A stretch of DNA of 64,000 nt from Haliotis rubra (GCF_003918875.1 NW_025765586.1:1-64000), one strand, 5' to 3'. Counted from the stretch's first letter, positions 1 through 47,069 are shown. Notes: generated by a model not told the origin, from the letters alone. Program-made: numbers and translations.

Positions 1-1143
1 GTTTCCTATGCAGAGTTTGGTCGTAAATGGAGACTCGCACCATTTCAATATAGGGCTCGGAAGCTAAGCTCTTCGGACTTGTACATTGCAATTCTAGGAA
101 AACTACTCTCTGAAGAAGAAAAATAAATTCTTAGATATCGTTGTCGGTGAATTTGGTCTTGGAAGTGATATCAGGAACCCAATGTACAGAAACCATCCAT
201 CTTCTTCTTCTTGACTGGGCATATATTTATCAGCACAATGCCCAGATATTCACCTTTTACAACGTCAGGATGTCATGAGAAAAGTGGTGGCTTTCTTTGC
301 TCACATATACTTGCTGAACTTAAAGGGCAAGCAAGCATCAGCTACAGCATCCTAGACCAAGACCCACAAGGAGAGGGATATTGTAAAACACCAGGTTCTG
401 GAAGAGACTTCTATGACACAATGACATACTCTGCGGAAGGTAGACAGTCAGTTCCATAACTCCGAGAGAAAGATTGTACCTCACGTTTTAGTTACAGTCA
501 GCGGAGCGGCAGCTCTCGCCATTCTTCTACATAACGAACGACCAAAAGCCAAGTCATGTAAAGGCTCTCTTTCAGGGTTGGTTCCATCCGACAGAAGTGG
601 AAGATCCACCTATAGCAATAATATCTGAATGCACAGAAGAAAGCAACTCTGGCTACCGACCAGCCAGTTCCACGTCTCCAACTCCATGGTAACCGTTCCT
701 GCTGGAAGCGAGTTTATTGCGCTACCAGTTCCACACAACCCACAACTTTGCCCATGTCTCTACTGCTGACGTTAGGAACACCTACTTCACTCCAACCGGC
801 ATAGTTTGTCCCAATTCATAACACCGTCGTCGATGTTAAAGTAAACGTCCCGGAACATTGGCAACCTTTGACTTGTGTCGTCTGAGATAAGTATCAGTTT
901 CCAGTATGAAGTTCCCCATCAGAAACTAAAGACGGTGATTGTGAACGGTCACTCATGATACTCCTTCGGTCTTCTGACCCACAATGGCCCGGATGGGGCT
1001 ACTTCGTCTGGGAGGTCTTTGAGTCACAACGTTCTACCAACAACTCTGCTACAATTCCAATCACAACAATGACGTCAGAGCTGAGCTTCGCTGAGTCTGA
1101 GGTTATGTATCCAACTGTAGCGGTGATCGTTGGAAGTCACTGG
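1..1143 (+). pseudogene. GH86-like porphyranase/agarase copy A: 3' part of exon 3 only, truncated by the window edge and heavily indel-disrupted
   Basis: Colinear with exon 3 of copy E from ~29744 (GESHHFH ... GGYVSTVAVIVGSH). Many scattered indels; the stop position reads TGG instead of TGA; AATAAA at 1175. The indel density suggests poor consensus rather than a proven pseudogene. Confidence 0.8.
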
Positions 1144-9400: not shown

Positions 9401-11272
9401 GACCAGGCAGAGATGCCGCTTTTCACGATGTGACTGGACAGTATGCTTCACAAGGTGTGCTGCGTTTTGGCAAACCCTTTCAAACTGAAACCTTGTTTTC
9501 ATTGCCTGAAGTGTGCTACTAAACAGTGGCATCATCGACATATTATCATCGTCGATAGGTACATCACTATGATGAAATACATTAGGGGTTGCTTAATTAA
9601 GTTCCATGTGTATATAACGAGCGGTTGTGTACTTTTTAATCTACGTATTCTCAGCAATTCTATAACCCTTTTCTCATCTGTTATTACGGTGATACTCGCT
9701 GGATGTTGAGTATTGAATGTATTGCCTGTTGAAATATGACAATTTAATCAACTGTTGAAAGTGGAGTTAGACCCTGCTCACTCTAATTCATAGGTTTGAT
9801 AATACATATTCAGGTGTGTATTGGCCTCACTGGATGGACACCTCTGCCCACCACGGATTCTTCCTGAACAACATCGATGCTGCAGCTGAGTTCGTCTTCC
9901 TGCTGGTCGATGCAGTCAACAAAGGAACCAAAGGACAAGCACCTATGTTCTTCGAAGTCATCAATGAACCAGAAAGTCAATGGAAGAACACGGACTGGAA
10001 TACCTTTATCAAATTTCATCAGGCTGTTGCTCTCGAAAATTAAGGCAAAATATCCCCATATGAGGGTTGGAGGTCCAACGTTAACTGGGGCTTCCATTTT
10101 GTTTGATCGTAATGACTTTAGGAATTGGAAACAGTATGCAGACTTTTTTGATATGGGTCTCAACAATTTAGATTTTTTCTCATTTCATTCCTACACAAGT
10201 ATGGATGTAAGTGGAGGCTCACACCATTTCCATGGGAGTTCCGAAGCTAAGCTTTTGGACTTCTGGATCTAGTTGAGAGCTACTCATAAGAAGAAAAATA
10301 AGTTGTTGGATATTATAGTCAGTGAATTTGGTCTCGGTCCAGTATCAGGACTTGATGTACAGAAGCCATCCACCTTTCTTGACTGGGCATACATTTACCA
10401 ACACAATGCCCAGATATTCACCTTTCTACAACGTCGGATGTCATGAGAAAAAGCCGTAGCTTCTGCTCACATATACTGACCTTAAAAGGGCAAGTATTAA
10501 CTCATAGCATTCTGGACAAGACCCACAAAGAGAGGGACATTGCCCAAGCTTTCAGGTTCTGGAAGAACTTCTATGATACAATGACATACTTACGAGTAGA
10601 CAGTCAGTTCCACAACCTGAGAGAAAGATTGTACCTCACGTTTTAGTTGATCAAACGAAACGGCGGCCTAACCATTCTTCTACATAACTATGACCAAAAG
10701 CCAAGTCATGTAAAGCTCTTCGACAAGGGTTGGTTCCATCCGACAAGTGGAAAGTCCACCTGTGAATATCTGAATGCACAGAAGAAAGCAACTCTAGCTA
10801 CAAACCAGCCAGTTCACGTCTCCAACTCTATGGTAACCGTTCCTGCTGAAGCGAGTTGTTACTTCCAGTTCCACACACTGTAAGCCACAACTTGCCCATG
10901 CTCCTACTGTGACCCAGAAAACGTACTACTCCACCGACATGGTTGTCCCATTCACAACACCGTCGTCGATGTTAAAGTTAACGTCCCGAACATTGGCAAC
11001 CTTGACTTTGTTCGTCTGAGAGTTGGTGTCAGTTTCAGCATAAAATCTCCCCATCAGAAACTCAAGACGGTGGTTGTGAACGGTCACTCCTTGACGTCCT
11101 TCTATTCTTCTGCAGACTCACAGTGGCTCTGTGAAGACACTGTATGGGAGGTCTTTGAGTACAACGTCCCCAACAACGTTGTACACCAACACAACAACGA
11201 CGTCAAACTTAGCTTCTCTCTGAGACTGGGGGTTATGTATCAACTGTGGCAGTGATCGTTGGAAGTCACTGA
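6436..11272 (+). CDS. GH86-like beta-porphyranase/agarase copy B (exons 6436-6667, 7761-7893, 9814-11272; several small frameshifts in this assembly)
   Basis: Signal peptide MKYLTLFVCILSTARC; GAGAAG|GTAAG donor; GCAG|GCACCT exon 2 (APEDPHKKGYPDPKYF..., 133 bp); CAG|GTGTG acceptor; EVINEP and VSEFG motifs; TGA at 11270-11272; AATAAA at ~11304. Near-identical to copy F. Confidence 0.8.
6765..7276 (-). mobile_element. 5'-truncated LINE 3' end in intron 1 of copy B
   Basis: ORF2 C-terminal-like FRSGCNALGI and CKHCKSIEDEIHIVYICKRYEDMR; AATAAA followed by a (TTC)n tail; TSD CATGGAAGAA. Confidence 0.8.
7450..7618 (+). mobile_element. tRNA-derived SINE (family A)
   Basis: A/B boxes, (CAGT)n tail, TSD TCAAGGGACGTA; orthologous insertion at 37120-37289. 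Confidence 0.9.
8631..9247. mobile_element. MITE with ~90-bp terminal inverted repeats (TIRs), nested in a hAT-like MITE (8518-9371)
   Basis: TACAGTCTAAGTAAACTTAGA...GGAAGGTCGCGTCAGGTAACCTT is mirrored by AAGGTTACC..CGCGACCTTC...GTTTACTTAGACTGT. Duplicate at 38321-38940. Confidence 0.8.
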
Positions 11273-12141
11273 TGGTGATTAATGTACAGAATCCCAATAA
11301 CTGAATAAATTCGGTTACAACATAGAAGTTGCACTTTACTTTATTTCAATGTGATGGAATGTGATATAAATCTCACCAAACCATTAAAACTTGTACTTGA
11401 AATTTGTTACTTCATTAGGTCCATGTAAAATAAAACAAAAACATCTGTATGTTTACAGATATGTTGAAATTGTAAAATTTGCCATTATTGAAATCTATGT
11501 AACTGATAAGAAAGGGCTATTAATAACAGTTCAGTTCAGTTCATGTCCATCTGCCTCTCAACAACAATCAAATGTATGAATTAAAAATTGATCTAACAAT
11601 AATCATAAACCTCATTTTTATCAAAAGAGTTTCCCAGGGTCACAATTCTCGAAAAGGTGAGGTACAATGACCTTGTCACAATGGTTAAGGTATCTAGAAA
11701 GATTGCTTCACACATACACACGCACGCACGCACGCACGCACGATCGCGAAAAAAAGTCAGATTTAGGATCCTGTTGGGTACAGACGTTTCAGGACTATGT
11801 GCCTTATTTATGTTTTGTGCACTTATCCCAATTTCGAGTTATTTAATCATTTGTCGTTCTCATTTGAACCCAAACGGACTATATATCCGAAAAAAACACT
11901 GTTTCAGCAGTATGACTTTGATTAATGAGGAATTTATGTAGAATCTGTTTGCACAGAAGCCAAATTGAAAATTTTATATATATGTACTTCAAGTGATTCT
12001 TTTGGGTATAAAATGTACATTTCTCTATAAACGTATTTATACAATACACTTACAATTATTTGTTGTTTTAATCTAAATCACATCACATATATACGTCTTC
12101 CATTAGTGTCTTATTAGTGTAATAGTGTCTATATTTGTAAT

Positions 12142-12194
12142 GGGGATTGTGCAGCTGATAAGATAGCAACATTCTTTCAAAAGAAAGTATATAA
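12142..12194 (+). promoter_or_regulatory. Conserved proximal promoter of copy C
   Basis: TGATAAGATAG at 12156-12166, TATATAA at 12188-12194. Confidence 0.65.
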
Positions 12195-12249
12195 GAGGTC
12201 CTATTAGCTGATTAGCACGGAGTTAATACCTAACGTAAAAGCAGTGGAG

Positions 12250-15200
12250 ATGGAATGGTTGGCACTGTTCGTGTGTCTACTATCAAGTGTAACATGTGAT
12301 TACACAGTGTCCATTTATCCTGAAATTCTCAAGATTGGGGCCGTTACTCATTTCAACCACGGGCGATGGAATGGTAAGAATGGACTGGATTCGCCGGCAA
12401 GTATTGCTCATGTTAAGGAGGTTGGAGCGACGGCAGCTCGATGGTTGAACAGAGATATGGCAGGGGGACTATTTGAGAAGGTAGGACATTGATGTACTGG
12501 ATAAGCACATGGTAGCGGTATGGATGTATCTGATAGCAGATGGTAGTGATATAATTATCATTTGTGTACATTTAACTGATCAACATTGAGGTTTTAGATA
12601 TGTGGGTTCTAAGTGAACGCTCTACTGCAGGGAGTATAATTTGAAACAAATGTCAACTTTATTCGCATATTTCTCAAAACGTGTTATGTCTTCTTCATAT
12701 ATACTTTTAAACAAGTAGGGATATTCAATGAAAGGTGTCACAACTATTGATATTTTATATCATTAATGAGATAAATAGTTTAACAGTGTAACGGGAACAT
12801 CTGACTTAGATTTGCATCAGTCGTTGATTGTAAAACAAGTCCAAAGTAAACTTTTGAAAACGAAAGAAGTTCACAACACGTTGGGAATGCAATAAATATA
12901 TTCTAAATCCATATACAACCATACACCATGGATCTCAAGTAATATTACCTCAAAACTGAATATCATTTATTTCATATTTTAGTTGTTGAAGTTTGAAATG
13001 TTCACATTTCGCGTGCACGCACGCACGCACATTCACATAACAGTTGCATCTAGTAGTTAGTCAGTAGAGTTTTATACTGCCTGTTACAATATTACAGGAT
13101 TATGACGAAATTGATTCTGTGAGGAATGTTTGTCCTCGCACAGGATATGGCGTGGTCGACTGAATGCACATTTTATGACGACGTCCTAACATGATGACCA
13201 GTGAAGTAATAATTGCACATCTATCGAACTGAACCCACGCCAACTTCTTCCTTTATACTCTCGAGTTATGAGGCTATCTATTTTCTTGACTCCACCTAAC
13301 ACTGAACATTCAGCAAAGACATATTATTACAAGTCGTTTTTAGATGTGAATATATAATAATAATAATAAATGTGAACTTATAATGCGCCTTTTCCATGCA
13401 CAAGGCCCATGCTCAAAGCGCTAACAAAGTGTGTGGATAATATACATATATACAATGAGGGACTAGTAGCTAGTCATAATGCAGTGAAAAGAGATGAGTC
13501 TTGAGCAGTCGTTTGAAGGAATGAAAGTCAACTGCTAATTTAATGGTGATAGGGAGAGAGTTCCAGAGTAGAGGGGCAGAGCAGGCAAAGGATTTCCTTC
13601 CAAAAGTTTGCAGTTTGAACAGAAGCACAGAGAGTAGGTTCAGATTCTGGTTCAGATGTGAAGAGGTAACTATGACTAACACTGTATTCCATTTCATGGC
13701 AGGCATCTGAAAACCCCAACAAGAAGGGCTACCCTGACCCCAAGTACTTTCAGGCCCATCAACAGGAAATCTGCACCAAATACTTGGATAATATGAATGG
13801 ATATCACAATCCTGAAGTTGTCATGGAAATAAAGGGTAATTCAGTTTTAACCTTGGTGTGAATGAAAGGTTTCATGTCTGAAATGTGTTCATGAGAGAGG
13901 GAGAGGGAGAGGGAGAGGGAGAGGGAGAGGGAGAGGGAAATTGAGAGGCAGAGGGGACTACTATACAATTATTGACTTCTAGTGAGGTTGATGAGAGGCG
14001 AAGCCGAGGTGAATATCACACGTCCAAGGTCGATAAATCATTGGATCAACCGAACTGAAGTCAATAATTGTTTTATTATAAGACGAAAGTACTGAATACC
14101 TGTTTTTCTGTGACACAGTCATGAATCTTCGTGGTGTTACGTTGTCTGCCATTTTGATACAGACGGGATGTAACTCTAAACCAACACAGTCACAGGGACG
14201 AAGCGATGCCTCTCGCTTCCTTATCTACATAATGCACGCAGTGCGGAGTTCACAGCTGGAATATCCCAACTCTATTTTAGGCACGGGAGGTGCTTCGATT
14301 GTTAAATCAACCTTCTCGTAACGTGACGAGGTTGACATCGCTTAGCGTCAAAGCTGTGATGTAACCAAGTGGGCCAATCAGAAGGGCGGAAATCTACCTG
14401 TCATATAATAAATACAGTTGTACTACGTCAATATTTGCCATTGTTACCCACCTGGTTTGTATCCAGGTATCACTTGGCCTCACTGGATGGACACCTCTGA
14501 CCACCACGGATTCTTCCCAAACAACATCGATGCTGCTGCTGAGTTCGTCTTCCTGCTGGTCGATGCAGTCAACAAAGGAACCAAAGGACAATCACCTATG
14601 TTCTTTGAAGTCATAAATGAACCAGGGAGCCAATGGCGGAACACGAACTGGACAACCTTTATCATATTTCATCAGGCTGTTGCTCAGAAAATTAAGGCAA
14701 AATACCCCCATATGAAAATCGGAGGTCCAACATTAACTGGAGCTTCTGCATATTTTGATCGTGAAGACTTCAAGATTTGGAACAAATCAGCAGATTTTTT
14801 GGACATGGCTCTGACCCATTTAGATTTTTTCTCATTTCATTCCTACACAACTATGGATGTAAGTGGAGGGACGCATCATTTCCATAGAAACTCTGAGGCC
14901 AAGATATTTGGTCTTCTGGATCTAGTTGAGAGCTACTCTCATAAGAAGAAAGGTTCTCAGTTCAATGTCATTGTGAGTGAATTTGGTCTTGGGCCATTAA
15001 CAGGAATTGATGAACAGAAACCATCCACCCTTGTTGACTGGGCATACATTTATCAACACAATGCCCAGATATTCACCTTTTCTACAGCGACGGGATGTCA
15101 TGAGAAAAGTGGTAGCTTTCTTGCTCACATATACTGATCGTAAAGGGCAAGCAAGTATTAACTATAGCATTCTGGACAAGACCCACAAAGAGAGGGACAT

Positions 15201-15930
15201 TGCCCAAGCTTTCAGGTTCTGGAAGAACTTCTATGACACAATGACGTACTTGCGAGTAGACACTCAGTTCCATAACTCCGAGAGAAAGATTGTACCTCAC
15301 GTTTTAGTTGATCAACGGAACGGCAGCCTCACCATTCTTCTACATAACTATGACCAAAAGCCAAATCATGTAAAGCTCTCTTTCGACAAGGGTTGGTTCC
15401 ATCCGACAAGTGGAAAGTCCACCTGTGAATATCTGAATGCACAGAAGAAAGGAACGCTGGCAACAAACCAGCCAGTTCACGTCTCCAACTCCATGGTAAC
15501 CGTTCCTGCTGAAGCCAGTTGTTACTTCCAGTTCCACACAAGCCACAACTTTGCCCATGCTCCTACTGTGACCCAGAATACCTACTACTCCACCGACATG
15601 GTTGTCCCCATTCACAACACCGTCGTTGATGTTAAAGTTAACGTCCCGAACATTGGCAACCTTGACTTTGTTCGTCTGAGGGTTAGTGTTAGTTTCAGCA
15701 TGAAGTCTCCCAATCAGAAACTCAAGACAGTGGTTGTAAACTCTCACACCTTAACGTCCTTCTACGGCCTGCAGACCCACAATGGCCCGGATGAGGCTAC
15801 AGTCTGGGATGTCTTTGAGTACAACGTCCCCAACAACCTGCTACACCAACACAATAACGACGTCAAACTTAGCTTCTCTGAGACCGGGGGTTATGTATCA
15901 ACTGTGGCAGTGATCGTCGGAAGTCACTGA
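12250..15930 (+). CDS. GH86-like beta-porphyranase/agarase copy C (exons 12250-12480, 13703-13835, 14467-15930; single +1 T at ~15080)
   Basis: Exons of 231, 133 and 1464 bp with GT-AG boundaries and compatible phases (0, then 1). ORFs 14418-15137 and 15007-15930 join if one T is removed from a T run. NEP and SEFG motifs; AATAAA at 15962. Confidence 0.85.
13351..13653 (-). mobile_element. L2/CR1-type LINE 3' fragment in intron 1 of copy C
   Basis: TFGRKSFACSAPLLWNSLP...SFKRLLKTHLF; (TTA)n tail; TSD AGATGTGAA; absent from the equivalent site in copies D and G. Confidence 0.85.
13958..14412. repeat. Unclassified interspersed repeat in intron 2 of copy C (also 21057-21478 in copy D)
   Basis: Local inverted repeat ACAATTATTGACTTC...GAAGTCAATAATTGT with a CCAATCAG end motif; looks like a non-autonomous DNA element. 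Confidence 0.4.
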
Positions 15931-16014
15931 TGGTGATTAGTGTACTGAATCCCAATAACTGAATAAATTCGGTTACAACATAGAAGTTGCACTTTACTTT
16001 ATCTCAGTGTGATG

Positions 16015-16238
16015 GACCCGTGAAGATCCAGGTTAGAATATTGATCTTCAGTAACCCTTGCTTGTCGTAAGAGGCGACTAACGGATCGGGTGGTCAGGCT
16101 TGCTGACTTGTTTGCCACATGTCATCGGTTCCCAATTGCGCAGATCGATGCTCATGCTGTTGATGACTGGATTGTCTGGTCCAGACTCGATTATTTACAG
16201 ACCGCCGCCATATAGCTGGAATATTGCTGAGTGCGGCA
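16015..16238 (+). mobile_element. SINE-like element (family B)
   Basis: GACCCGTGAAGATCC...TTGTCGTAAGAGGCGACTAA...GCTGGAATATTGCTGAGTGCGGC; more than 10 copies in the window. Confidence 0.85.
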
Positions 16239-19805: not shown

Positions 19806-22800
19806 ATGAAATGGTTGACACTTTTCGTGTGTATTCTATCAAGCGCAACATGTGATTACACTGTGTCCATTTATCCTGAAATTCTCAAGATTGGGGCCGT
19901 TACTCATTTCAACCATGGGCGATGGAATGGTAAGAATGGACTGGACACACCGGCAAGTATTGCTCATGTTACGGAGGTTGGAGCGACGGCAGCCCGATGG
20001 TTGAACAGAGATATGGCAGGGGGACTATTTGAGAAGGTAGGACGTATGGATGAATCTGATAGCAGATGGTAGTGATATAATTATCATTTCCTGTACAATT
20101 AACTGATCAACATTGTGGTTTTTTAGATATGTGGGTTCTAAGTGAACGCTCTAATGCCGGGAGTATAATTTGAAAGAAATGTCAACTTTATTCGCATATT
20201 TCTCAAAATGTGTTTTGCCTTTATGCCCTCTTCATATGTACTTTTAAACAAGTAGGGATATTCAATGAAAGGTGTCACAACTATTGATATTTTATATCAT
20301 TAATGAGATAAATAGTTTAACATTGTAACGGGAACACCTGCATCACTCGTTGATTGTCAAACAAGTCCAAAGTAAACTTTTAATAACGAAAGAAGTTCAC
20401 AACACATTGGGAATGCATGGATCTCTAGTAATATTACCTCAAAACTGAATATCATTTATTTTATATTTTTGTTGTTGAAGTTTGAAATGTTCACACGCAC
20501 GCACGCACGCGCACGCACATTCACATAACAGTTGCATCTAGTAGTTAGTCAGTAGAGTTTTATACTGTCTGTTACAATATTACAGAAGTATGACGAAAAT
20601 TGATTCTGTGAGGAATGTTTGTGAGATATGGCGTGGTCGACTGAATGCACATTTTATGACGATGTCCTAACACGATGACCAGTGAAGTAATAACTGCACA
20701 TCTATCAAACTGAACCCACGCCAACTTCTTCCTTGATACTCTCGACTTATGAGGCTATCTATTCCCTGACTCCACCTAACACTGACCATTCAGTTTTTAG
20801 ATGTGAAGAGGTAACTATGACTAACACTGTATTCCATTTCATGGCAGGCATCTGAAAACCCCAACAAGAAGGGCTACCCTGACCCCAAGTACTTTCAGGC
20901 CCATCAACAGGAAATCTGCACCAAATACTTGGATAATATGAATGGATATCACAATCCTGAAGTTGTCATGGAAATAAAGGGTAATTCAGTTTTAACCTTG
21001 GTGTGAATGAAAGGTTTCATGTCTGAAATGTGTTCATGAGTGAGGGAGAGGGAGCTACTATACAATTATTGAAGCCGAGGTGAATATCACGTGTCCAAGG
21101 TCGATAAATCATTGGATCAACCGAACTGAAGTCAATAATTGTTTTATTATAAGACAAAAGTCGTGAATACCTGTTTTTCTGTGACACAGTCATGAATCTT
21201 CGTGGTGTTATGTTGTCTGCCATTTTGATACAGATGGGATGTAACTCTAAACCAACACAGTCACAGGGACGAAGCGATCGCTTCCTTATCTAGCGTGACG
21301 CACTCAGTGCGGAGTTCCCAGCTGGATTATCCCAAGTCTACTTTAGCAACGGGATGTGCTTGGATTGTTAAATCAACCTCTCGGGACGAGGCGAGGTTGA
21401 CATCGCTTAGCGTCAAAGCTGTGATGTAACCAAGTGGGCCAATCAGAAGGGCGGAAATCTACCCGTCATAAAATAAATACAGTTGTACTACGTCAATATT
21501 TGCCATTGTTACCCACCTGGTTTGTATCCAGGTATCACATGGCCTCACTGGATGGACACCTCTGCCCACCACGGATTCTTCCCAAACAACATCGATGCTG
21601 CTGCTGAGTTCGTCTTTCTGCTGGTCTATGCAGTCAACAAAGGAACCAAAGGACAATCACCTATGTTCTTCGAAGTCATCAATGAACCAGGGAGCCAATG
21701 GCGGAACACGAACTGGACTTCCTTCATCATATTTCGTCAGGCTGTTGCTCAGAAAATTAAGGCAAAATACCCCAATATGAAGATCGGAGGTCCAACATTA
21801 ACTGGAGCTTCTGCATATTTTGATCGTGAAGACTTCAAGATTTTGGAACAAATCAACAGATTTTTTGGACATGGCTCTGACCCATTTAGATTTTCTCTTT
21901 TTCTCATTTCATTCCTACACAAGTATGGATGTAAGTGGAGGGACGCATCATTTCCATAGAAACTCTGAGGCCAAGATCTTTGGTCTTCTGGATTTAGTTG
22001 AGAGCTACTCTCATAAGAAGAAAGGTTCTCAGTTCAATGTCATTGTGAGTGAATTTGGTCTTGGGCCATTAACAGGAATTGATGAACAGAAGCCATCCAC
22101 CTTTCTTGACTGGGCGTACATTTATCAACACAATGCCCAGATATTCACCTTTCTACAACGTCGGGATGTCATGAGAAAAGTGGTAGCTTTCTTGCTCACA
22201 TATACTGAACTTAAAGGGCAAGCAAGCATCAACTACAGCATCCTAGAAGAGAGTCTAAGGGAGTGGATATTGCTCCAAGCTTTGTGGTTCTGGAAGAACT
22301 TCTATGACAATGACGTACTTGCGAGTAGACACTCAGTTCCATAACTCCGAGAGAAAGATTGTACCTCACGTTTTAGTTGATCAACGGAACGGCAGCCTCA
22401 CCATTCTTCTACATAACTACGACCAAAAGCCAAATCATGTAAAGCTCTCTTTCGACAAGGGTTGGTTCCATCCGACAAGTGGAAAGTCCACCTGTGAATA
22501 TCTGAATGCACAGAAGAAAGCAGCTCTAGCTACAAACCAGCCAGTTCACGTCTCCAACTCCATGGTAACCGTTCCTGCTGAAGCGAGTTGTTACTTCCAG
22601 TTCCACACAACCCACAGCTTTGCCCATGCTCCTACTGTGACCCAGAACACCTACTACTCCACCGACATTGTTGTCCCAATTCACAACACCGTCGTCGATG
22701 TTAACATTAACGTCCCGAACATTGGCAACCTTGACTTTGTTCGTCTGAGGGTAAGTGTCAGTTTCAGCATGAAGTCTCCCAATCAGAAACTCAAGACAGT

Positions 22801-23001
22801 GGTTGTAAACTCTCACACCTTAACGTCCTTCTACGGCCTGCAGACCCACAATGGCCCGGAATGAGGCTACAATCTGGGATGTCTTTGAGGTACAACGTCC
22901 CCAACAACCTGCTACACCAACACAATAACGACGTCAAACTTAGCTTCTCTGAGACTGGAGGTTATGTGTCAACTGTGGCAGTGATCGTTGGGAATCACTG
23001 A
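19806..23001 (+). CDS. GH86-like beta-porphyranase/agarase copy D (exons 19806-20036, 20848-20980, 21532-23001; several indels in exon 3)
   Basis: Close paralogue of copy C, including introns. Exon 3 is 1470 bp versus 1463 expected, with a garbled stretch at ~22245-22310. Ends VIVGNH-TGA. Confidence 0.75.
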
Positions 23002-27083: not shown

Positions 27084-30000
27084 ATGAAATGGCTGACACT
27101 TTTCGTGTGTATACTATCAAGCGTAAGATGTGATTACACCGTGTCCATTTATCCTGAAATTCTCAAGATTGGGTCAGTTACTCATTTCAGACACTCGCGA
27201 TGGAATGGTAAGAATGGACTGGACAGCCCCACAACTATTCCTTATGTGAAGAAAGTTGGCGCAACAGCAGCCAGATGGTTGAACAGAGATTTGAGAAATG
27301 GACTATTTGAACAGGTAAGACGTTATATTACTATAGTATTGATAATGTAGAATAAAATCAAACTTCCTCACCCACCCAAGACGTACAGGCTGACAAACTA
27401 ACCCTCCTAAATTATTCATGTCAGGCAGCTGAGAACGCCCTTAAAATGGCTCAATTACTCATTCACCCAATCCCACTTACTGACTCGTTCTAGACATACA
27501 AGAAGGATATCTAACCTTCTATCACGTTTCATGGCAGGCACCTGAGGACCTCCACAAGAAGGGCTATCCTGACCCGAAGTACTTCGAGGCGAATCAAAAT
27601 AAAATCAGCTACAATTACCTAAACGTTATGAATGGATACGGCGACCCTGAAATGGTCATGGAAGTAAAAGGTATTTCAATGGAGTGTGTCTCGGGATATC
27701 GATATAGAAGATAGAGATCGATAATCGTTAACTAACTTGATTATCGATAAATATCGGATAAGTTACTTTCAGCAAAGATGAAAAAAATATCAGAAAGAGT
27801 GAGTGAGTTTAGTTTTATGCCGCACTCAGCAATATTCCAGTTATATGGCGGTAGAAAGAAATGAATATATGTCAAACCTCTGGTGAATATGTGTCACACC
27901 TCTGGTTAATATGTCACACCTCTGGTGAATGTATGTCACACCTCTGGTGAATATGTCACACCTCTGGTGAATATGTCACACCTCTGGTGAATATATGTCA
28001 CACCTCTGGTGAATGGCGACATGTTTATGCTGGGTTACTAACGAGCAGCGTCCTGAACACAATTTAGAAACAGACCATGATTAAAAACCTAACTTTGTGT
28101 ATTGTGTGAGTAAACTAAAACTTTAAGGTTTATGTCCGATATCATCGATTACACTATCTTCATATCGATAGTCTTTGATAATTTTTCCCTGACGATATTT
28201 CCGATTATCGATATTTTAGCCAGCCCTATAGTGCCATGTGATTCTAATTTTCTGTAATCGGAAAAAACTAATCTAATGTGTATGGGTAGGTACTGTGAGT
28301 GGTGATGGATATATTTCCTACACTAGTACACCTATGAAGCTTTTCTTTGCCCCTGTGATGAGCCAGCATATTGCTAAACAGTCAATAAGCTGACGACTGG
28401 GAACATACCTAATTTTGAGATTTTGAAGAATGTAATTAGTTTGAAGAACTGAAAATTGATTTCACAAATAATTTTTCTTGCAAGGTCAGTGATTGGTCAA
28501 TGCGACAGTGACCACAAGCCATATACTGTAGTTCCCATGAAGAGTGTTCTTGTCCGCTGGCTTTGTGTTGTCGAGAAACCTACTTAGTTTATGATAAATC
28601 ATAATATGCCTTATATGTTTGACGTTGTTCATAGAAGGGGACACATGTTCGCTGTCTCAGATGTAACTGGGATAGCAAAGAACAACAGAATGTTACAGAA
28701 TCATGCCAAATATCAAACTTCCAGTTTCCACGCCCGTGAAGATGCAGCTTCCAATTTATTCTGTGGTAAACACACGAGGCCCTATTTTCCACCACTAGTG
28801 TGAAACGCCTTGAATATAGCTAGATGTGCCATATAAAGTGGTCAATACACATTCGTATGTATGTTTCTCTTCGGTTAGCCTTTTAAGCCCATCTTAAGAC
28901 TCCCAACGAAAATTACCGATCAAAATTCCTTTACATTGCATAAAATTATACGGGATCTAAGAGCGGTTCAAACAGGTGTTGATGGACGATAAACGGTCCT
29001 AATTTTCAAATAACGACCAAGGTTATTTATTCAATTATATTGAATGACTGTTTCGAAATGTCAATTCCCATTCTTGTCAAGAAAGCTTAAAACTACATTT
29101 AAGAGTGACCTAGCTTTTACGAAAGTCTGAATGCACAGTCATATGTCCATAAGACTCTGTTAATTGAAAAAACATTAAGAACGGTAGAGCGTTGAGTTTT
29201 GATTCTCAATAGTTTCAGCAATTACAATCCATGTTTCTAATCTGTGTATACAGTATTAAATATATTGCTTGTTGACGAATAAGCTGCAATATTTTCATAG
29301 TTTAATCAGTTGTTAAAAAGGGAGTTAAACCCAACTCTCTCGAATTCACAGGCCTGTTGTTTTATATTCAGGGTTGAACTGGCCTCACTGGATGGACACC
29401 TCTGCCCACCACGGATTCTTCCCCAACAACATCGATGCTGCTGCTGAGTTCGTCTTTCTGCTGGTCGACACAGTCAACAAAGGAACCAAAGGACGAGCAC
29501 CTACATTCTTCGAAATCATCAATGAACCCGACGCTCAATGGCAGAACACAAACTGGACTTCCTTCATCAAATTTCATCAGGCTGTTGCTCAGAAAATTAA
29601 GGCCAAATATCCCCATATGAGTGTTGGTGGTCCAACGTTAACTGGAGCTTCCCTTCTGTTTGACCGTTATGACTTTAGGAATTGGAAACGATATGCAGAC
29701 TTTTTAGATATGGGTCTCCACCATTTAGATTTTTTCTCATTTCATTCCTATGCAAGTTTGGTCGTAAATGGAGAGTCGCACCATTTCCATGGGAGCTCCG
29801 AAGCTAAGCTCTTTGGACTTATTGACCTGGTCGAGAGCTACTCTCACAAGAAGAAAAATAAATTCTTAGATATCATTGTCAGTGAATTTGGTCTTGGTCC
29901 AGTATCAGGACTTAATGTACAGAAACCATCCACCTTTCTTGACTGGGCATATATTTATCAACACAATGCCCAGATATTCACCTTTCTACAACGTCGGGAT

Positions 30001-30835
30001 GTCATGAGAAAAGCTGGTAGCTTTCTTGCTCACATATACTGAACTTAAAGGGCAAGCAAGCATCAACTACAGCATCCTAGACAAGACCCACAAGGAGAGG
30101 GATATTGCTCAAGCTTTCAGGTTCTGGAAGAACTTCTATGACACAATGACATACTTGCGAGTAGACAGTCAGTTCCATAACTCCGAGAGAAAGATTGTAC
30201 CTCACGTTTTAGTTGATCAACGGAACGGCAGCCTCACCATTCTTCTACATAACAACGACCAAAAGCCAAGTCATGTAAAGCTCTCTTTCGACAAGGGTTG
30301 GTTCCATCCGACAAGTGGAAAGTCCACCTGTGAATATCTGAATGCACAGAAGAAAGCAACTCTAGCTACAAACCAGCCAGTTCACGTCTCCAACTCTATG
30401 GTAACCGTTCCTGCTGAAGCGAGTTGTTACTTCCAGTTCCACACAACCCACAACTTTGCCCATGCTCCTACTGTGACCCAGAACACCTACTACTCCACCG
30501 ACATTGTTGTCCCAATTCACAACACCGTCGTCGATGTTAAAGTAAACGTCCCGAACATTGGCAACCTTGACTTTGTTCGTCTGAGGGTAAGTGTCAGTTT
30601 CAGCATGAAGTCTCCCCATCAGAAACTAAAGACGGTGATTGTGAACGGTCACTCCTTGGCGTCCTTCTACGGTCTACAGACCCACAATGGCCCGGATGAG
30701 GCTACTGTGTGGGAGGTCTTTGAGTACAACGTTCCCAACAACCTGCTACACCAACACAACAATGACGTCAAACTGAGCTTCGCTGAGTCTGGAGGTTATG
30801 TATCAACTGTGGCAGTGATCGTTGGAAGTCACTGA
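27084..30835 (+). CDS. GH86-like beta-porphyranase/agarase copy E (exons 27084-27314, 27538-27670, 29372-30835; single +1 at ~30015)
   Basis: Exons of 231, 133 and 1464 bp with canonical splice sites; EIINEP and VSEFG motifs; ORFs 29374-30042 and 30026-30835 join after removing one base; AATAAA at 30866. Confidence 0.85.
27862..28014. repeat. Minisatellite, ~20-22-bp unit GAATATGTCACACCTCTGGT, ~7 copies, in intron 2 of copy E
   Basis: Direct tandem repeats visible in the sequence. Confidence 0.9.
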
Positions 30836-35580: not shown

Positions 35581-36394
35581 AATCAAGGATGGGCAGGCCT
35601 TTAAATCAAGTGTCAGAGGGAAGTATTATCAACAGTGATAATAGGTTTTAGAATACTACCTCTAACACTTGATTTAAAACCTACCCTTCACCGGATTCCC
35701 AGAGTACATTTCACTAAATGTCCATTAGGAAAATTAATGAAGTGTCCCGTGCTTACCGGGGGAGTCAACTCCTTCGGATAGCGCATGGGAAGACAATGTG
35801 GACGTAAGAAAACACAACTCAATGGATTTTGATTAATTTTATTCAGTTAAACCTGAGGATCAGAAACAAGTTTCTTGAAAAGGTATTCTAATCATTGTTG
35901 ATAATACTTCAAAATTAATTTCCCCGGCCGCATCATACCAAAAGACGTTAAAATATGGTACTTGTTGGTCCCTGCCTGGCACTCGGCATTAATGGGTACA
36001 ACAAGGACTGAAGATCAGCTCGAGTCAGTATAATGTGTCTGAGTGGGGTATTCATGCTTCACTGCGGCATGGTATCTCAGTGGGCTAGCACTATAAAACC
36101 AGCTTAAGTCTGGGCTAGTACAAGCAGCCGCACATACATATACACACGCATGCACGTCGTCATATGAGCGAAATATTCTCAAGCACCGACGTTAAACCTA
36201 ATTTCACCTCACCTCACCTCACCTCAAAATTACTAGTATTCCTCTGGGGTCCTAGTTGTACAATAAAAAGCTGATATAATCTCATTAAACTAGTATTTCT
36301 CATAAAATATATCTTTTTAGATTCAAATAGAACCAGCTTTTAATCTCACTCGGGTATATTTTAAGGTTTCAAAGTCTATATTTACAGTGGAATT

Positions 36395-36446
36395 GGGATT
36401 GTGCAACCGATAAGATAGCAACATTCTTTCCTATATATGTATATAA
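36395..36446 (+). promoter_or_regulatory. Conserved proximal promoter of copy F
   Basis: GATAAGATAG at 36409-36418, TATATAA at 36440-36446. Confidence 0.65.
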
Positions 36447-36517
36447 GATACAGCCTTGTTAGCTGATTGTCACTGATTCTCTTGTTTGTTGATATATCTA
36501 TCGTGATAGCAGCAGAG

Positions 36518-39500: not shown

Positions 39501-40968
39501 ATTCAGGTGTGTATTGGCCTCACTGGATGGACACCTCTGCCCACCACGGATTCTTCCCGAACAACATCGATGCTGCAGCTGAGTTCGTCTTCCTGCTGGT
39601 CGATGCAGTCAACAAAGGAACCAAAGGACAAGCACCTATGTTCTTCGAAGTCATCAATGAACCAGAAAGTCAATGGAAGAACACGGACTGGAATACCTTT
39701 ATCAAATTTCATCAGGCTGTTGCTCGGAAAATTAAGGCAAAATATCCCCATATGAGGGTTGGAGGTCCAACGTTAACTGGGGCTTCCATTTTGTTTGATC
39801 GTAATGACTTTAGGAATTGGAAACAGTATGCAGACTTTTGGATATGGGTCTCAACAATTTAGATTTTTTCTCATTTCATTCCTACACAAGTATGGATGTA
39901 AGTGGAGGCTCACACCATTTCCATGGGAGTTCCGAAGCTAAGCTTTTTGGACTTCTGGATCTAGTTGAGAGCTACTCTCATAAGAAGAAAAATAAATTGT
40001 TGGATATTATAGTCAGTGAATTTGGTCTCGGTCCAGTATCAGGACTTGATGTACAGAAGCCATCCACCTTTCTTGACTGGGCATACATTTACCAACACAA
40101 TGCCCAGATATTCACCTTTCTACAGCGTCGGGATGTCATGAGAAAAGCCGTAGCTTTCCTGCTCACATATACTGAACTTAAAGGGCAAGCAAGTATTAAC
40201 TATAGCATTCTGGACAAGACCCACAAAGAGAGGGACATTGCCCAAGCTTTCAGGTTCTGGAAGAACTTCTATGATACAATGACATACTTACGAGTAGACA
40301 GTCAGTTCCATAACTCCGAGAGAAAGATTGTACCTCACGTTTTAGTTGATCAACGAAACGGCGGCCTAACCATTCTTCTACATAACTACGACCAAAAGCC
40401 AAGTCATGTAAAGCTCTCTTTCGACAAGGGTTGGTTCCATCCGACAAGTGGAAAGTCCACCTGTGAATATCTGAATGCACAGAAGAAAGCAACTCTAGCT
40501 ACAAACCAGCCAGTTCACGTCTCCAACTCCATGGTAACCGTTCCTGCTGAAGCGAGTTGTTACTTCCAGTTCCACACAACCCACAACTTTGCCCATGCTC
40601 CTACTGTGACCCAGAAAACGTACTACTCCACCGACATGGTTGTCCCCATTCACAACACCGTCGTCGATGTTAAAGTTAACGTCCCGAACATTGGCAACCT
40701 TGACTTTGTTCGTCTGAGAGTTGGTGTCAGTTTCAGCATAAAATCTCCCCATCAGAAACTCAAGACGGTGGTTGTGAACGGTCACTCCTTGACGTCCTTC
40801 TATTCTCTGCAGACTCACAGTGGCTCTGGTGAAGACACTGTATGGGAGGTCTTTGAGTACAACGTCCCCAACAACGTTGTACACCAACACAACAACGACG
40901 TCAAACTTAGCTTCTCTGAGACTGGGGGTTATGTATCAACTGTGGCAGTGATCGTTGGAAGTCACTGA
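36518..40968 (+). CDS. GH86-like beta-porphyranase/agarase copy F (exons 36518-36746, 37455-37587, 39507-40968; -2 at the end of exon 1 and -1 at ~39838)
   Basis: Same exon layout as the other copies. Lesions are TTTGAAG for TTTGAGAAG and a T4 run for T5. Near-identical to copy B. Confidence 0.82.
37120..37289 (+). mobile_element. tRNA-derived SINE (family A), duplicate of 7450-7618
   Basis: A/B boxes, (CAGT)n tail. Confidence 0.9.
38321..38940. mobile_element. MITE nested in a hAT-like MITE (duplicate of 8631-9247)
   Basis: Same TIRs and same host element. Confidence 0.8.
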
Positions 40969-42160: not shown

Positions 42161-42213
42161 GGGGATTGTGCAGCTGATAAGATAGCAACATTCTTTCCAA
42201 CGAAAGTATATAA
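42161..42213 (+). promoter_or_regulatory. Conserved proximal promoter of copy G
   Basis: TGATAAGATAG at 42175-42185, TATATAA at 42207-42213. Confidence 0.65.
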
Positions 42214-42268
42214 GAGGTCCTATTAGCTGATTAGCACGGAGTTAATACCTAACGTAAAAGCAGTGGAG

Positions 42269-45200
42269 ATGGAATGGTTGGCACTGTTCGTGTGTCTACT
42301 ATCAAGTGTAACATGTGATTACACAGTGTCCATTTATCCTGAAATTCTCAAGATTGGGGCCGTTACTCATTTCAACCACGGGCGATGGAATGGTAAGAAT
42401 GGACTGGATTCACCGGCAAGTATTGCTCATGTTAAGGAGGTTGGAACGACGGCAGCTCGATGGTTGAACAGAGATATGGCAGGGGGACTATTTGAGAAGG
42501 TAGGACATTGATGTACTGGATAAGCACATGGTAGCGGTATAGTTATTTTCTTATTTATGTACATTTAACTGATCAACATTGTGGTTTTAGATATGTGGAT
42601 TCTAAGCGAATGCTTCTATGCCGGGAGTACAATTTGAAACCAGACGTCAGCATGTAGATTCTCTTATTTCTCAAAGTTTGTTTTTTGCCTTTATGCCCTC
42701 TTGATATGAATGATTAAGCAAGCAGGGGTATTCAATAAAAATGTCCCACAACTATTGATATTTTATATCATTAATGAGATAAATAGTTTAACAGTATCAC
42801 AGAAACATCTGACTGAGATTTGCATTCATCGTTGAACGTCACATGACCATAGATTGTGTTCTTAGAGTGGCCAAAACGCCATACTGTCCATCAGGTCCTT
42901 TCCTATGAAAAGCAAAACCCATTAATATCGGGTGAATCCACCTCTGTTCTCCTCAAGAAAATCCCCCCATTCAACGATGCATATTCCTAATGAAACTTCT
43001 AATATCAACTTAGTTCAATTCATCCAATTCAATTTTAATCAATCCGAATACATAACGTTGGTCCAACGACGATTGACTTAATCCTGCCGTTCTTGACACA
43101 CCGACGTCTTGCAGTAATATGAGATTCCGCATTATTAACCCTGTGTCCTCTCATAACATCGGTGTTTTCCCTGAAGCTCATCTCCGATTTGAGAGGCACT
43201 TTGACCACAAACCAAACAGCCCGTCTTGTGCGGCAGTTGCTGCCCTCGGTTGTGTCATCAACATTGTTCACGCTATCGTAACAGGATGGCCAATGACGTA
43301 ATAATTACACATATTGCAGTGAGTGAGTTTAGTCTTACGCCGTACTCAGCAATATTCCAGCTATGTGGTCTGTAAAAAATCGTGTGTGGACCAGACCATC
43401 CAGTGATCAACAGCATGAGCATCGATCTGCGCAATTGGGAACCGATGACATGTGTCTGACCACCCGATCCCGTTAGTGACCTCTTACGACAAGCATGGGT
43501 CACTGAAGGCCAGTATTCTAACCCGGACCTTCACGGGTCACACATAGTGCATTGAACTTTGAACTGATATTATACCACTTTCATCATTGACACTGTTGAC
43601 TATATCCTGTCTCAACTAACACTGAAACATTCAGCAAAACCATTGTTACCAGCCACAATGTTTTTAAATGTGATGAGGTAACTATGAATAACTAAGACTG
43701 TATTCCATTTCATGGCAGGCATCTCAAAACCCCAACAAGAAGGGCTACCCTGACCCCAAGTACTTTCAGACCCATCAAAAGGAAATCTGCACCAAATACT
43801 TGGACAATATGAATGGATATCACAATCCGGAAGTTGTCATGGAAATAAAGGGTAATTCAGTTTTTTATCTTGTTTAAATTAAAGACAATTTCTTAAATAT
43901 GTTAAAATATTTGCAGAAGGTTGAGAATACAAGCATGTCTTTCATTATCCAATGGAAAGATTGTATAGCTGAGAGGAATGGTTACGGTGGAATTAAACAA
44001 ATTCCACAATTGACAAGCGGAAAATTTTGTTTAAGATTCTCACGATTAAAATGGGGATATTACATGTAAAACAAACTGTGTTTGAGATCGGGATCGGGAA
44101 GTAGCTCCACACACACCACCACACCACACATCANNNNNNNNNNNNNNNNNNNNNNNNNNNNNNNNNNNNNNNNNNNNNNNNNNNNNNNNNNNNNNNNNNN
44201 NNNNNNNNNNNNNNNNNNNNNNNNNNNNNNNNNNNNNNNNNNNNNNNNNNNNNNNNNNNNNNNNNNNNNNNNNNNNNNNNNNNNNNNNNNNNNNNNNNNN
44301 NNNNNNNNNNNNNNNNNNNNNNNNNNNNNNNNNNNNNNNNNNNNNNNNNNNNNNNNNNNNNNNNNNNNNCTCTATTCATATAAACAACTATCAGAGAAAG
44401 AAGAGGGAGGGCTACAAACAGTTGCCTTATGTCTATTGGTGTTATCGTTACCCACCTGGTTTGTATCCAGGTGTCACTTGGCCTCACTGGATGGACACCT
44501 CTGCCCACCACGGATTCTTCCCGAACAACATCGATGCTGCAGCTGAGTTCGTCTTCCTGCTGGTCGATGCAGTCAACAAAGGAACCAAAGGACAAGCACC
44601 TATGTTCTTCGAAGTCATCAATGAACCAGAAAGTCAATGGAAGAACACGGACTGGAATACCTTTATCACATTTCATCAGGCTGTTGCTCGGAAAATTAAG
44701 GCAAAATATCCCCATATAAGGGTTGGTGGTCCAACGTTAACTGGAGCTTCCATTTTGTTTGATCGTAATGACTTTAGGAATTGGAATCGGTATGCAGACT
44801 TTTTGGATATGGGTCTCAACAATTTAGATTTTTTCTCATTTCATTCCTACACAAGTATGGATGTAAGTGGAGGCTCACACCATTTCCATGGGAGTTCCGA
44901 AGCTAAGCTTTTCGGACTTCTGGATCTAGTTGAGAGCTACTCTCACAAGAAGAAAAATAAATTGTTGGATATTATAGTCAGTGAATTTGGTCTCGGTCCA
45001 GTATCAGGACTTGATGTACAGAAGCCATCCACCTTTCTTGACTGGGCGTACATTTACCAACACAATGCCCAGATATTCACCTTTCTACAGCGTCGGGATG
45101 TCATGAGAAAAGTGGTAGCTTTCCTGCTCACATATACTGAACTTCAAGGGCAAGCAAGTATCAACTATAGCATTCTGGACAAGACCCACAAAGAGAGGGA

Positions 45201-45933
45201 CATTGCTCAAGCTTTCAGGTTCTGGAAGAACTTCTATGATACAATGACGTACTTGCGAGTAGACAGTCAGTTCCATAACTCCGTGAGAAAGATTGTACCT
45301 CACGTTTTAGTTGATCAACGGAACGGCAGCCTTACCATTCTTCTACATAACTACGACCAAAAGCCAAGTCATGTAAAGCTCTCTTTCGACAAGGGTTGGT
45401 TCCATCCGACAAGTGGAAAGTCCACCTGTGAATATCTGAATTCACAGAAGAGAGCAACGCTGGCAACAAACCAGCCAGTTCACGTCACTAACTCCATGGT
45501 AACCGTTCCTGCTGAAGCGAGTTGTTTCTTCCAGTTCCACACAACCCACAACTTTGCCCATGCTCCTACTGTGACCCAGAACACCTACTACTCCACCGAC
45601 ATTGTTGTCCCCATTCACAACACCGTCGTCGATGTTAAAGTTAACGTCCCGAGGATTGGCAACCTTGACTTTGTTCGTCTGAGAGTTGGTGTCAGTTTCA
45701 GCATGAAGTCTCCCCATCAGAAACTCAAGACGGTGGTTGTGAACGGCCACACCCTGACGTCCTTCTACGGTCTACAGACCCACAGCGGCCCTGGTGAAGA
45801 CACTGTATGGGAGGTCTTTGAGTACAACGTCCCCAACAACGTTGTACACCAACACAACAACGACGTCAAACTTAGCTTCTCTGAGACTGGGGGTTATGTA
45901 TCAACTGTGGCAGTGATCGTTGGGAATCACTGA
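42269..45933 (+). CDS. GH86-like beta-porphyranase/agarase copy G, intact 608-aa ORF (exons 42269-42499, 43719-43851, 44471-45933)
   Basis: 231+133+1463 = 1827 nt open frame; signal peptide MEWLALFVCLLSSVTC. Putative acid/base Glu in VINEP (codon 44623-44625, about E173) and nucleophile Glu in VSEFG (44983-44985, about E293). AATAAA at 45965. Intron 2 contains an N gap. Confidence 0.9.
43319..43539 (-). mobile_element. SINE family B in intron 1 of copy G
   Basis: Consensus match; TSD CACACATA(T/G)TGCA. Confidence 0.85.
44134..44369. other. Assembly gap (N run) in intron 2 of copy G
   Basis: Run of N. Confidence 1.
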
Positions 45934-46842: not shown

Positions 46843-47069
46843 GTTTAATACACTGAAACTGTATTGGAGTTGATAAACAGCGTGACAGCATGGTACGTAG
46901 GATGTGAGTGACTGAGTGAGTGGATCGGAGTGGGTGAATGAATGAGCGTCCTCAGCTCCCTGACATGGAACGTTTAAGAGAGTCAGTTTTTCAGCCTGTA
47001 CGTCTCGAGTGTGTAAGGAAGTTTGATTTTACCCAACATGAACAATACAATAGTAATATCACGTCTTAC

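What the first reader, a model, noticed from the sequence alone, without database searches (positions are those of the whole stretch)
14610..15010. Paralogue divergence is concentrated in loops beside the catalytic residues
Seen, three exon-3 types. After NEP: ESQWKNTDW (B/F/G), GSQWRNTNW (C/D), DAQWQNTNW (E). After GAS: ILFDRNDFRNW, AYFDREDFKIW, LLFDRYDFRNW. After HSY: TSMDVSGGSHHFHGS, T(T/S)MDVSGGTHHFHRN, ASLVVNGESHHFHGS. After SEFGLGP: VSGLDVQ, LTGIDEQ, VSGLNVQ. Neighbouring segments and most of the C-terminal ~250 aa are almost identical. Known: loops following the barrel strands shape the substrate cleft of GH-A enzymes. Inference: isoforms specialised for differently sulfated or methylated galactans.
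Basis: partly seen in the sequence, partly recalled or inferred. Interest (0 to 1): 0.75.

Follow-up and report, generated by a model that had tools for sequence, protein, structure and literature searches.

The report
Gene-conversion mosaic in abalone GH86 genes
Seven tandem abalone genes for seaweed-galactan-cutting enzymes differ in one old block of the catalytic barrel mainly because gene conversion has erased differences on either side of it, not because the active-site loops show positive selection.

Summary
The window is the start of a Haliotis rubra contig. It carries seven tandem three-exon GH86-like genes (A-G), annotated in other abalones as "beta-porphyranase A-like". The scan had already flagged GH86 arrays elsewhere in this genome.

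**Cause of the pattern:** silent-site divergence (dS) tracks amino-acid divergence along exon 3.
- Codons 40-200 (strand 4 to helix 7, both catalytic Glu): dS 0.33-0.82 between types. These codons cluster by type across three Haliotis species.
- Codons 201-405: dS 0.10-0.22 between types, below the 0.35-0.49 of same-type genes in different species. These codons cluster by species.
- AU tests reject each segment's tree on the other segment (p 4e-8 and 4e-64).
- Copy G is a visible mosaic: C-like 5' end, F-like exon 3.

**Loops inside the old block:** the quoted loops have dN/dS 0.35-0.59 against 0.12-0.19 elsewhere, always below 1. With loops defined by structure alone the excess is not significant. 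Half of the C/D-diagnostic residues lie outside the loops.

**Gene integrity:** only G is intact in this assembly. The breaks in the other copies may be assembly errors. Substrate specialisation remains untested.

The parts
12250..12480 (+). Copy C, exon 1 (signal peptide and first barrel elements)
   Evidence: tblastn with P0001/P0003, and a GT donor after the exon
13703..13835 (+). Copy C, exon 2
   Evidence: tblastn and AG/GT splice sites; phase-1 junction with exon 3
14467..15930 (+). Copy C, exon 3 (487 codons: barrel strands 4-8 and two beta-sandwich domains). The frame is broken by one extra T in the run at 15078-15081.
14586..15020 (+). Old divergence island (exon-3 codons ~41-185; strand 4 to the strand-7 loop), which has escaped homogenisation
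   Evidence: 10-30% nucleotide divergence between types here against 0-7% in the flanks, with the same limits in three species. dS 0.33-0.82. The tree clusters by type.
14619..14621 (+). Codon of the acid/base Glu (NEP motif; E173 in P0001 numbering)
   Evidence: Aligned to the NEP of BuGH86; invariant in 34 homologues
14979..14981 (+). Codon of the nucleophile Glu (SEF motif; E293)
   Evidence: Aligned to BuGH86 E322, the residue mutated in 5TA0 (PMC5849685)
14625..14651 (+).
14748..14780 (+).
14847..14891 (+).
14997..15017 (+).
15066..15683 (+). Homogenised tract in copy C (exon-3 codons ~201-405)
   Evidence: dS 0.10-0.22 between types against 0.35-0.49 for same-type genes across species. 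The tree clusters by species.
1..1140 (+). Copy A, 3' part of exon 3; E-like, cut by the contig start, 38 indels relative to G
9813..11272 (+). Copy B, exon 3; 99% identical to F but with 17 indels
   Evidence: At several of these indels the short-read contigs carry the unbroken form.
21531..23001 (+). Copy D, exon 3 (C/D type); about five indels
29371..30835 (+). Copy E, exon 3 (E type); one extra C at 30014. The truncated product equals H. rubra LOC124271701 (P0018) exactly.
39506..40968 (+). Copy F, exon 3 (B/F/G type); 1-bp deletion at 39835. Exon 1 also lacks 2 bp at its end (~36743).
42269..45933 (+). Copy G, the only intact gene (608 aa; exons 42269-42499, 43719-43851, 44471-45933). It is a mosaic: the 5' end is 99.5% identical to C, and the exon-3 island is 97-99% identical to F.

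Best explanation
The window holds a tandem array of abalone (Haliotis rubra) genes for secreted GH86-type retaining beta-galactanases. These have an (alpha/beta)8 barrel plus two beta-sandwich domains, with the acid/base Glu in NEP and the nucleophile Glu in SEF. The paralogues evolve as a mosaic. Non-allelic gene conversion or unequal exchange repeatedly homogenises the 5' end, the start of exon 3 and most of the C-terminal half within each species. One block of about 145 codons, from barrel strand 4 to the loop after strand 7, has escaped this and keeps lineages that predate the split of H. rubra, H. asinina and H. rufescens. These lineages are a C/D type and a B/F/G-plus-E group. 'Variable loops beside the catalytic residues, identical elsewhere' is therefore mostly a contrast in age between an unconverted island and converted flanks.

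Inside the island the whole sequence is under purifying selection. The surface loops on the catalytic face are simply the least constrained part, as they are across the whole mollusc family.

Shown here: the mosaic, the age contrast, the fold, the catalytic residues and dN/dS below 1.

Inferred: the island persists because conversion across it is suppressed, either by its own divergence or by selection for distinct cleft shapes.
For: **Family and fold.**
- phmmer to the BuGH86 agarase, E 7e-18 over the whole exon-3 product.
- The model of the 89-90% identical H. asinina P0001 matches BuGH86, Aga86A_Wa and BpGH86A at TM 0.74-0.81.
- The catalytic motifs are invariant or nearly so.

**Age contrast.**
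- Sliding NG86 windows: dS 0.4-1.9 in codons ~45-195, 0.05-0.2 in ~200-405, and higher again in 406-465.
- By segment, codons 201-405 have between-type, same-species dS of 0.10-0.22. Same-type genes in different species have 0.35-0.49.
- Codons 40-200 have between-type, same-species dS of 0.33-0.82, against 0.38-0.57 across species.

**Trees.**
- Codons 40-200 group C, D, Has_P0003 and Hru_P0004 (95%), E with Has_P0001 (94%) and B, F, G (97%).
- Codons 201-405 group the sequences by species: the H. asinina pair at 100%, and the window copies plus that pair at 99%.
- AU tests reject each tree on the other segment (p 4e-8 and 4e-64).

**Other support.**
- Direct mosaic: G is 99.5% identical to C at 42000-42400, and 97-99% identical to F but 81% to C at 44600-45000.
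- The island has the same limits in all three species.
- Conversion reaches more distant paralogues too: H. rufescens P0004 against P0005 has dS 0.05-0.28 in codons 301-390 and is saturated elsewhere.
- dN/dS is 0.2-0.29 in the N-part and 0.35-0.59 in the quoted loops.
Against: - This excess is absent from most within-type comparisons across species. That is the pattern expected if the loops changed when the types arose and were then kept.
- Eight of the 17 C/D-diagnostic residues are in those loops.
- The island ends at the same places in three species whose flanks were homogenised independently. This hints that conversion into it is selected against.
- Pairwise dN/dS averages over sites and cannot exclude a few positively selected codons.
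- No model coordinates were available, so distances to the substrate were not measured.
Confidence: 0.8

Rival explanations
1. Adaptive loop diversification. After duplication, positive selection reshaped the cleft loops next to the catalytic Glu residues. This gave isoenzymes for differently sulfated or methylated galactans, and that selection is the main reason divergence sits where it does.
For: - The loops lie on the catalytic face after strands 4-7.
- N/S in the quoted loops is about three times that of the rest of the island between types, but not within types.
- The C/D-type loop residues are conserved across three species.
- The island has the same limits in three species.
Against: - dN/dS in the loops is 0.35-0.59, never above 1.
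- With loops defined by structure rather than picked by eye, the N/S excess is not significant (p 0.22-0.52).
- Variable positions are enriched only 40% against 26% (p 0.075).
- Nine of the 17 diagnostic residues lie in helices, in strand 5 and in the turn at the bottom of the barrel.
- The identity of the flanks is explained by conversion.
- The same loops are the most variable elements family-wide.
- The published GH86 agarose/porphyran determinants lie elsewhere (PMC5849685).
Confidence: 0.13
2. Differential constraint only. There is no recombination, and the C-terminal half is identical merely because it is under much stronger purifying selection than the catalytic loops.
For: dN/dS is somewhat lower in the C-part (0.10-0.20) than in the N-part (0.21-0.29).
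Against: - Silent divergence itself drops three- to six-fold in codons 201-405. It falls below the level of orthologues in other species.
- The two segments have significantly incompatible trees.
- Copy G is a visible chimera.
Confidence: 0.03
3. Assembly artefact. The mosaic and the near-identical tracts come from collapse or mis-polishing of a high-identity tandem array in a long-read hybrid assembly.
For: - Six of the seven copies carry frame-breaking indels, while most of the 88 or more other GH86-like exon-3 matches in the genome are intact.
- B is 99% identical to F yet has 17 indels.
- Short-read contigs disagree with the assembly at several bases and indels.
Against: - The same island-and-flank pattern, with the same limits, is seen in the chromosome-level assemblies of H. 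asinina and H. rufescens.
- Point errors would not create type-specific clades shared across species.
Confidence: 0.03

Closest known systems
Bacterial GH86 endo-galactanases: BuGH86 beta-agarase (5TA0/5TA1/5TA5), Aga86A_Wa (8H97), BpGH86A beta-porphyranase (4AW7)
   Same: - Same three-domain fold (TM 0.74-0.81).
- Significant sequence similarity over the whole exon-3 product (E 7e-18).
- Same NEP acid/base and S-E-[FY] nucleophile positions.
   Different: - Only 16-19% identity.
- Animal nuclear genes with two introns and a signal peptide, in tandem arrays, with at least 88 exon-3 matches in this genome.
- The loop after the acid/base is about six residues shorter than in BuGH86.
- No activity has been measured. 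No paper on a mollusc GH86 was found in the library.
Partial concerted evolution of tandem paralogues with a divergence island (for example primate red/green opsin genes or RHD/RHCE; cited from my own knowledge, not checked here)
   Same: - Paralogues are more alike within a species than orthologues are across species in some segments.
- A functionally important segment keeps old lineage-specific differences.
- Chimeric copies arise within the array.
   Different: - The genes here encode digestive glycoside hydrolases of a family otherwise known from bacteria.
- The island covers half of a TIM barrel, including both catalytic residues.
- Whether selection or mere sequence divergence keeps conversion out is not known.
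NCBI 'beta-porphyranase A-like' gene models of Haliotis asinina, H. rufescens and H. rubra (P0001-P0007, P0018)
   Same: - Orthologous array and the same exon structure.
- P0018 is exactly the truncated product of copy E.
- P0003 and P0004 are orthologues of the C/D type. P0001 groups with E in the island.
   Different: - The other species hold three to four members of this subclade, where this window has seven.
- These are automatic names only, with no functional data.

Membership tests
Glycoside hydrolase family 86 (clan GH-A) | Significant sequence similarity to characterised GH86 enzymes | tested here: met
   phmmer E 6.8e-18 to BuGH86, aligned over residues 57-500 of the 503-aa ORF. The Pfam porphyranase domains BPA_C (26.0 bits, cut-off 26.2) and Porphyrn_cat_1 (19 bits, cut-off 27) fall just under or under threshold.
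Glycoside hydrolase family 86 (clan GH-A) | (alpha/beta)8 catalytic barrel followed by two Ig-like beta-sandwich domains | tested here: met
   The AlphaFold model of orthologue P0001 (pLDDT 88, pTM 0.91) has all three solved GH86 enzymes as top Foldseek hits, E 1e-31 to 1e-39 and TM 0.74-0.81 over the full length.
Glycoside hydrolase family 86 (clan GH-A) | Catalytic pair: acid/base Glu at the end of strand 4 (N-E-P) and nucleophile Glu at the end of strand 7 | tested here: met
   Both align to the BuGH86 residues; E322 is the published nucleophile (PMC5849685). N172 and E173 are invariant and E293 is at least 90% conserved in 34 homologues. Both are present in copies B-G.
Glycoside hydrolase family 86 (clan GH-A) | Endo-beta-galactanase activity on agarose or porphyran | not testable with these tools
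   No biochemical data. No paper on mollusc GH86 was found.
Concerted evolution by non-allelic gene conversion | In the converted segment, paralogues within a species are closer than orthologues between species, at silent sites too | tested here: met
   In codons 201-405, dS is 0.10-0.22 within a species between types, and 0.35-0.49 for the same type across species.
Concerted evolution by non-allelic gene conversion | Significantly different tree topologies in adjacent segments | tested here: met
   Clustering by type against clustering by species; reciprocal AU rejection at p 4e-8 and 4e-64.
Concerted evolution by non-allelic gene conversion | Recognisable recent tracts or chimeric copies within the array | tested here: met
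   The upstream region and exon 1 of G are 99.5% identical to C. Its exon-3 island is 97-99% identical to F and 81% to C.
Positive (diversifying) selection on active-site loops | dN/dS above 1 in the loops, or in a defined set of their codons | tested here: not met
   Pairwise NG86 in the four quoted stretches gives 0.35-0.59 between types and 0.04-0.29 within types. Site models could not be run.
Positive (diversifying) selection on active-site loops | Replacement changes significantly enriched in cleft loops relative to the rest of the same recombination block | tested here: inconclusive
   Hand-picked stretches: odds ratio about 3, p 0.01-0.09. Loops defined by structure: odds ratio 1.35-1.74, p 0.22-0.52. 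Variable positions: 40% against 26%, p 0.075.

The most novel reading that the evidence does not exclude
The strand-4-to-strand-7 island is kept free of gene conversion by selection. On this reading it encodes at least two ancient specificity classes of animal GH86 galactanases, the C/D type and the B/F/G/E group, whose cleft loops recognise different decorations of red-algal galactans. The rest of the gene is allowed to homogenise. That would make the array a natural domain-swap experiment in an animal-encoded seaweed-digesting enzyme family.
Probability: 0.3. Interest if true: 0.55.

Novelty: new member of a known kind. Interest (0 to 1): 0.35.

Why it matters
- **Method.** 'Divergence concentrated near the active site' can be produced by gene conversion of the flanks. 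Silent-site and tree checks per segment are needed before invoking adaptation.
- **Abalone biology.** The array keeps at least two old versions of half the catalytic barrel on a shared, homogenised scaffold. This names the residues to swap (17 diagnostic positions, residues 206-302) when testing whether the animal's own GH86 enzymes differ in substrate range on agar, porphyran and related galactans.
- **Annotation.** Six of the seven copies are broken in this assembly, perhaps artefactually. One is already annotated as a truncated protein (LOC124271701).

Tried and rejected
- **Branch-wise N/S counts.** I wanted replacement and silent counts on type-founding against within-type branches. The tree program refuses ancestral sequences on this machine, so I used independent pairwise contrasts instead and tried no other route.
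- **Frameshifts from reads.** The runs found are kept only as short contigs.
  - At four of B's indels (10252, 10718, 11108, 11130) the contigs carry the unbroken form.
  - Those contigs could come from the 99% identical copy F.
  - Nothing was listed at C's T-run (15078-15081), five indel rows were not shown, and coverage of the site is uncertain. The question stays unresolved.
- **Expression.** No run on record as RNA holds the stretch. One possible RNA run of another species gave only 30-59-nt pieces and no spliced joints. Nothing can be said.
- **Distances to the cleft.** I classified residues by secondary-structure element instead.
- **Mapping published subsite residues.** The BuGH86 -2/-3 subsite residues (T82, Q138, M396; PMC5849685) could be placed only approximately. 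The chain index expected for M396 is not a Met in the alignment. All three fall outside the strand 4-7 loops.
- **Literature.** Searches for GH86, agarase or porphyranase in abalone or molluscs found only papers on gut bacteria.
- **Constraint-only and assembly-artefact explanations.** Both rejected.

Full report
**What is in the window.**
- The window is bases 1-64000 of contig C696 of a 1.38-Gb assembly.
- It is Haliotis rubra. The spliced product of copy E, read to its premature stop, equals the 344-aa protein LOC124271701 of H. rubra (P0018) residue for residue.
- On the + strand lie seven copies of one gene, each with three exons of about 231, 133 and 1464 nt. They are labelled A to G.
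- A is cut by the contig start. A stray inverted exon-1 fragment lies at 47052-47300.
- The exon-3 product matches the Bacteroides uniformis GH86 beta-agarase over its whole length (E 7e-18).
- An AlphaFold model of the 89-90% identical H. asinina protein P0001 (pLDDT 88) has the three solved GH86 enzymes as its best structural matches (TM 0.74-0.81).
- The acid/base Glu (NEP) and the nucleophile Glu (SEF; equivalent to BuGH86 E322, PMC5849685) are conserved.
- The family is very large in this genome, with at least 88 exon-3 matches, most of them with open frames. Haliotis, Mytilus and a chiton carry automatically named homologues.

**The observation.**
- The stretch 14610-15010 is the part of copy C's exon 3 between the two catalytic codons (14619-14621 and 14979-14981).
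- Elsewhere the proteins are nearly identical: dN 0.017-0.032 in codons 201-405.
  - The assembly shows frame-breaking indels in six of the seven copies.
  - A second divergent patch lies at codons ~421-460.
  - Copy G is a chimera.

**Why the divergence sits where it does.** I aligned the copies codon by codon on the intact copy G, treating indels as gaps.
- Silent divergence follows replacement divergence along the exon. dS is 0.4-1.9 in codons ~45-195, 0.05-0.2 in ~200-405, and high again in ~406-465.
- I added exon 3 of the orthologous arrays of H. asinina and H. rufescens, fetched with their DNA.
- Codons 40-200 then give a tree in which genes cluster by type across species: C, D, Has_P0003 and Hru_P0004 at 95%; E with Has_P0001 at 94%; B, F and G at 97%.
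- Codons 201-405 give a tree in which genes cluster by species.
- Each alignment rejects the other's tree (AU p 4e-8 and 4e-64).
- In codons 201-405, dS between types within a species (0.10-0.22) is lower than dS between same-type genes of different species (0.35-0.49).
- In codons 40-200 it is as high or higher: 0.33-0.82 against 0.38-0.57.
- The island has the same limits, about codons 41-185, in all three species.
- Within the window, G is 99.5% identical to C across its upstream region and exon 1. It is 97-99% identical to F, and only 81% to C, in the exon-3 island.
- In H. rufescens, conversion reaches even a 68%-identical paralogue in codons 301-390.

Together these results show repeated non-allelic gene conversion or exchange that homogenises the flanks and leaves an old island.

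**Are the loops special inside the island?**
- By DSSP on the model, the four quoted stretches follow strands 4, 5, 6 and 7 on the catalytic face.
- Variable positions make up 40% of beta-to-alpha-loop residues against 26% of the others (p 0.075).
- Between types, dN/dS is 0.35-0.59 in the four stretches and 0.12-0.19 in the rest of the island. Within a type across species it is 0.04-0.29 against 0.09-0.22.
Those stretches were chosen because they look variable.
- For loops 4-7 defined by structure alone the excess is not significant (odds ratio 1.35-1.74, p 0.22-0.52).
- Seventeen residues separate the C/D type from all other sequences in the three species. All lie between residues 206 and 302.
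- Eight of them are in the quoted loops. Nine are in strand 5, helices 5 and 6, and a run at 285-289 at the bottom of the barrel.
- Across 34 mollusc homologues, loops 4-7 are the most variable structural class: entropy 1.74-1.97, against 1.03 for strands and 1.37 for helices.
- The loops therefore evolve faster but under net purifying selection. A burst of change when the types arose is possible but not shown.

**Link to substrate choice.**
- In bacterial GH86 the agarose-versus-porphyran difference is attributed to the -2 subsite (T82/F77 and M396/S326), and the -3 subsite to a Trp and Q138/H114 (PMC5849685).
- By the alignment these lie before strand 4 and after strand 8. In the abalone genes that means exons 1-2 and the homogenised part, not the four loops.
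- This placement is approximate.
- In clan GH-A enzymes the loops after strands 4-6 usually line the aglycone side (my own knowledge). A difference in plus-subsite preference or product length is therefore conceivable.
- None of this was tested.

**Integrity and expression.**
- Only G has an intact 608-aa reading frame.
- C has one extra T in a T-run (15078-15081). E has one extra C (30014).
- F lacks one T (39835) and 2 bp at the end of exon 1.
- D, B and A have about 5, 17 and 38 indels.
- B is 99% identical to F in substitutions. That is an odd ratio for a real pseudogene.
- Short-read contigs show the unbroken form at several of B's indels, and they differ from the assembly at other bases. 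They could derive from F, however, and they do not resolve C's site.
- No RNA evidence was found.
- Whether H. rubra has working C/D- and E-type genes is open. The orthologues in H. asinina and H. rufescens are intact.

**Comparison with what is known, and novelty.**
- The genes pass every sequence and fold test for GH86. Activity is untested.
- Animal GH86 genes are already in public annotation, and this scan has flagged them on other contigs of this genome. I found no paper on them.
- Partial concerted evolution with a preserved divergent island is a well-known kind of process. This is a clear new example in an animal digestive-enzyme family.

Noticed in passing
window 42000-45000 (copy G) against 11800-16200 (C) and 36050-41250 (F): G is a recent chimera. 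Its upstream region and exon 1 are 99.5% identical to C. The island of its exon 3 is 97-99% identical to F.
   Followed up: yes
window 47052-47300 (- strand): An isolated, inverted exon-1 fragment of the same gene family with an in-frame stop. It has no exons 2-3 nearby, so it is probably a remnant of a rearranged copy.
   Followed up: partly
window 9813-11272 (B) against 39506-40968 (F): B and F are 99% identical in substitutions, but B carries 17 indels and F two different ones. This ratio suggests consensus errors of a long-read assembly in a near-identical repeat rather than decay.
   Followed up: partly
G000 genome-wide; contigs C2249, C164, C2468, C1213, C415 and others: At least 88 GH86-like exon-3 matches, mostly with open frames and in large tandem clusters. 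This is a very large expansion of the family in this abalone.
   Followed up: no
L003 and L004 (H. rufescens), exon-3 codons 301-390: Conversion between paralogues that are only about 68% identical overall (P0004 against P0005). dS is 0.05-0.28 in this tract and saturated elsewhere. The first beta-sandwich domain seems to be a conversion hot spot across subfamilies.
   Followed up: partly
L001:4679-6140 (H. asinina): An unannotated third copy lies between P0003 and P0001, about 90% identical to G, with a frame change near codon 336-341. The arrays of other species also hold broken members.
   Followed up: no
window 48571-49085, 50135-50409, 63647-64000: Minisatellites with units of 32, 55 and 28 nt. 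The last is G/T-rich and explains the strong GC skew at the window's end. N runs lie at 44134-44369 (intron 2 of G) and 52479-52728; they were left untouched.
   Followed up: no
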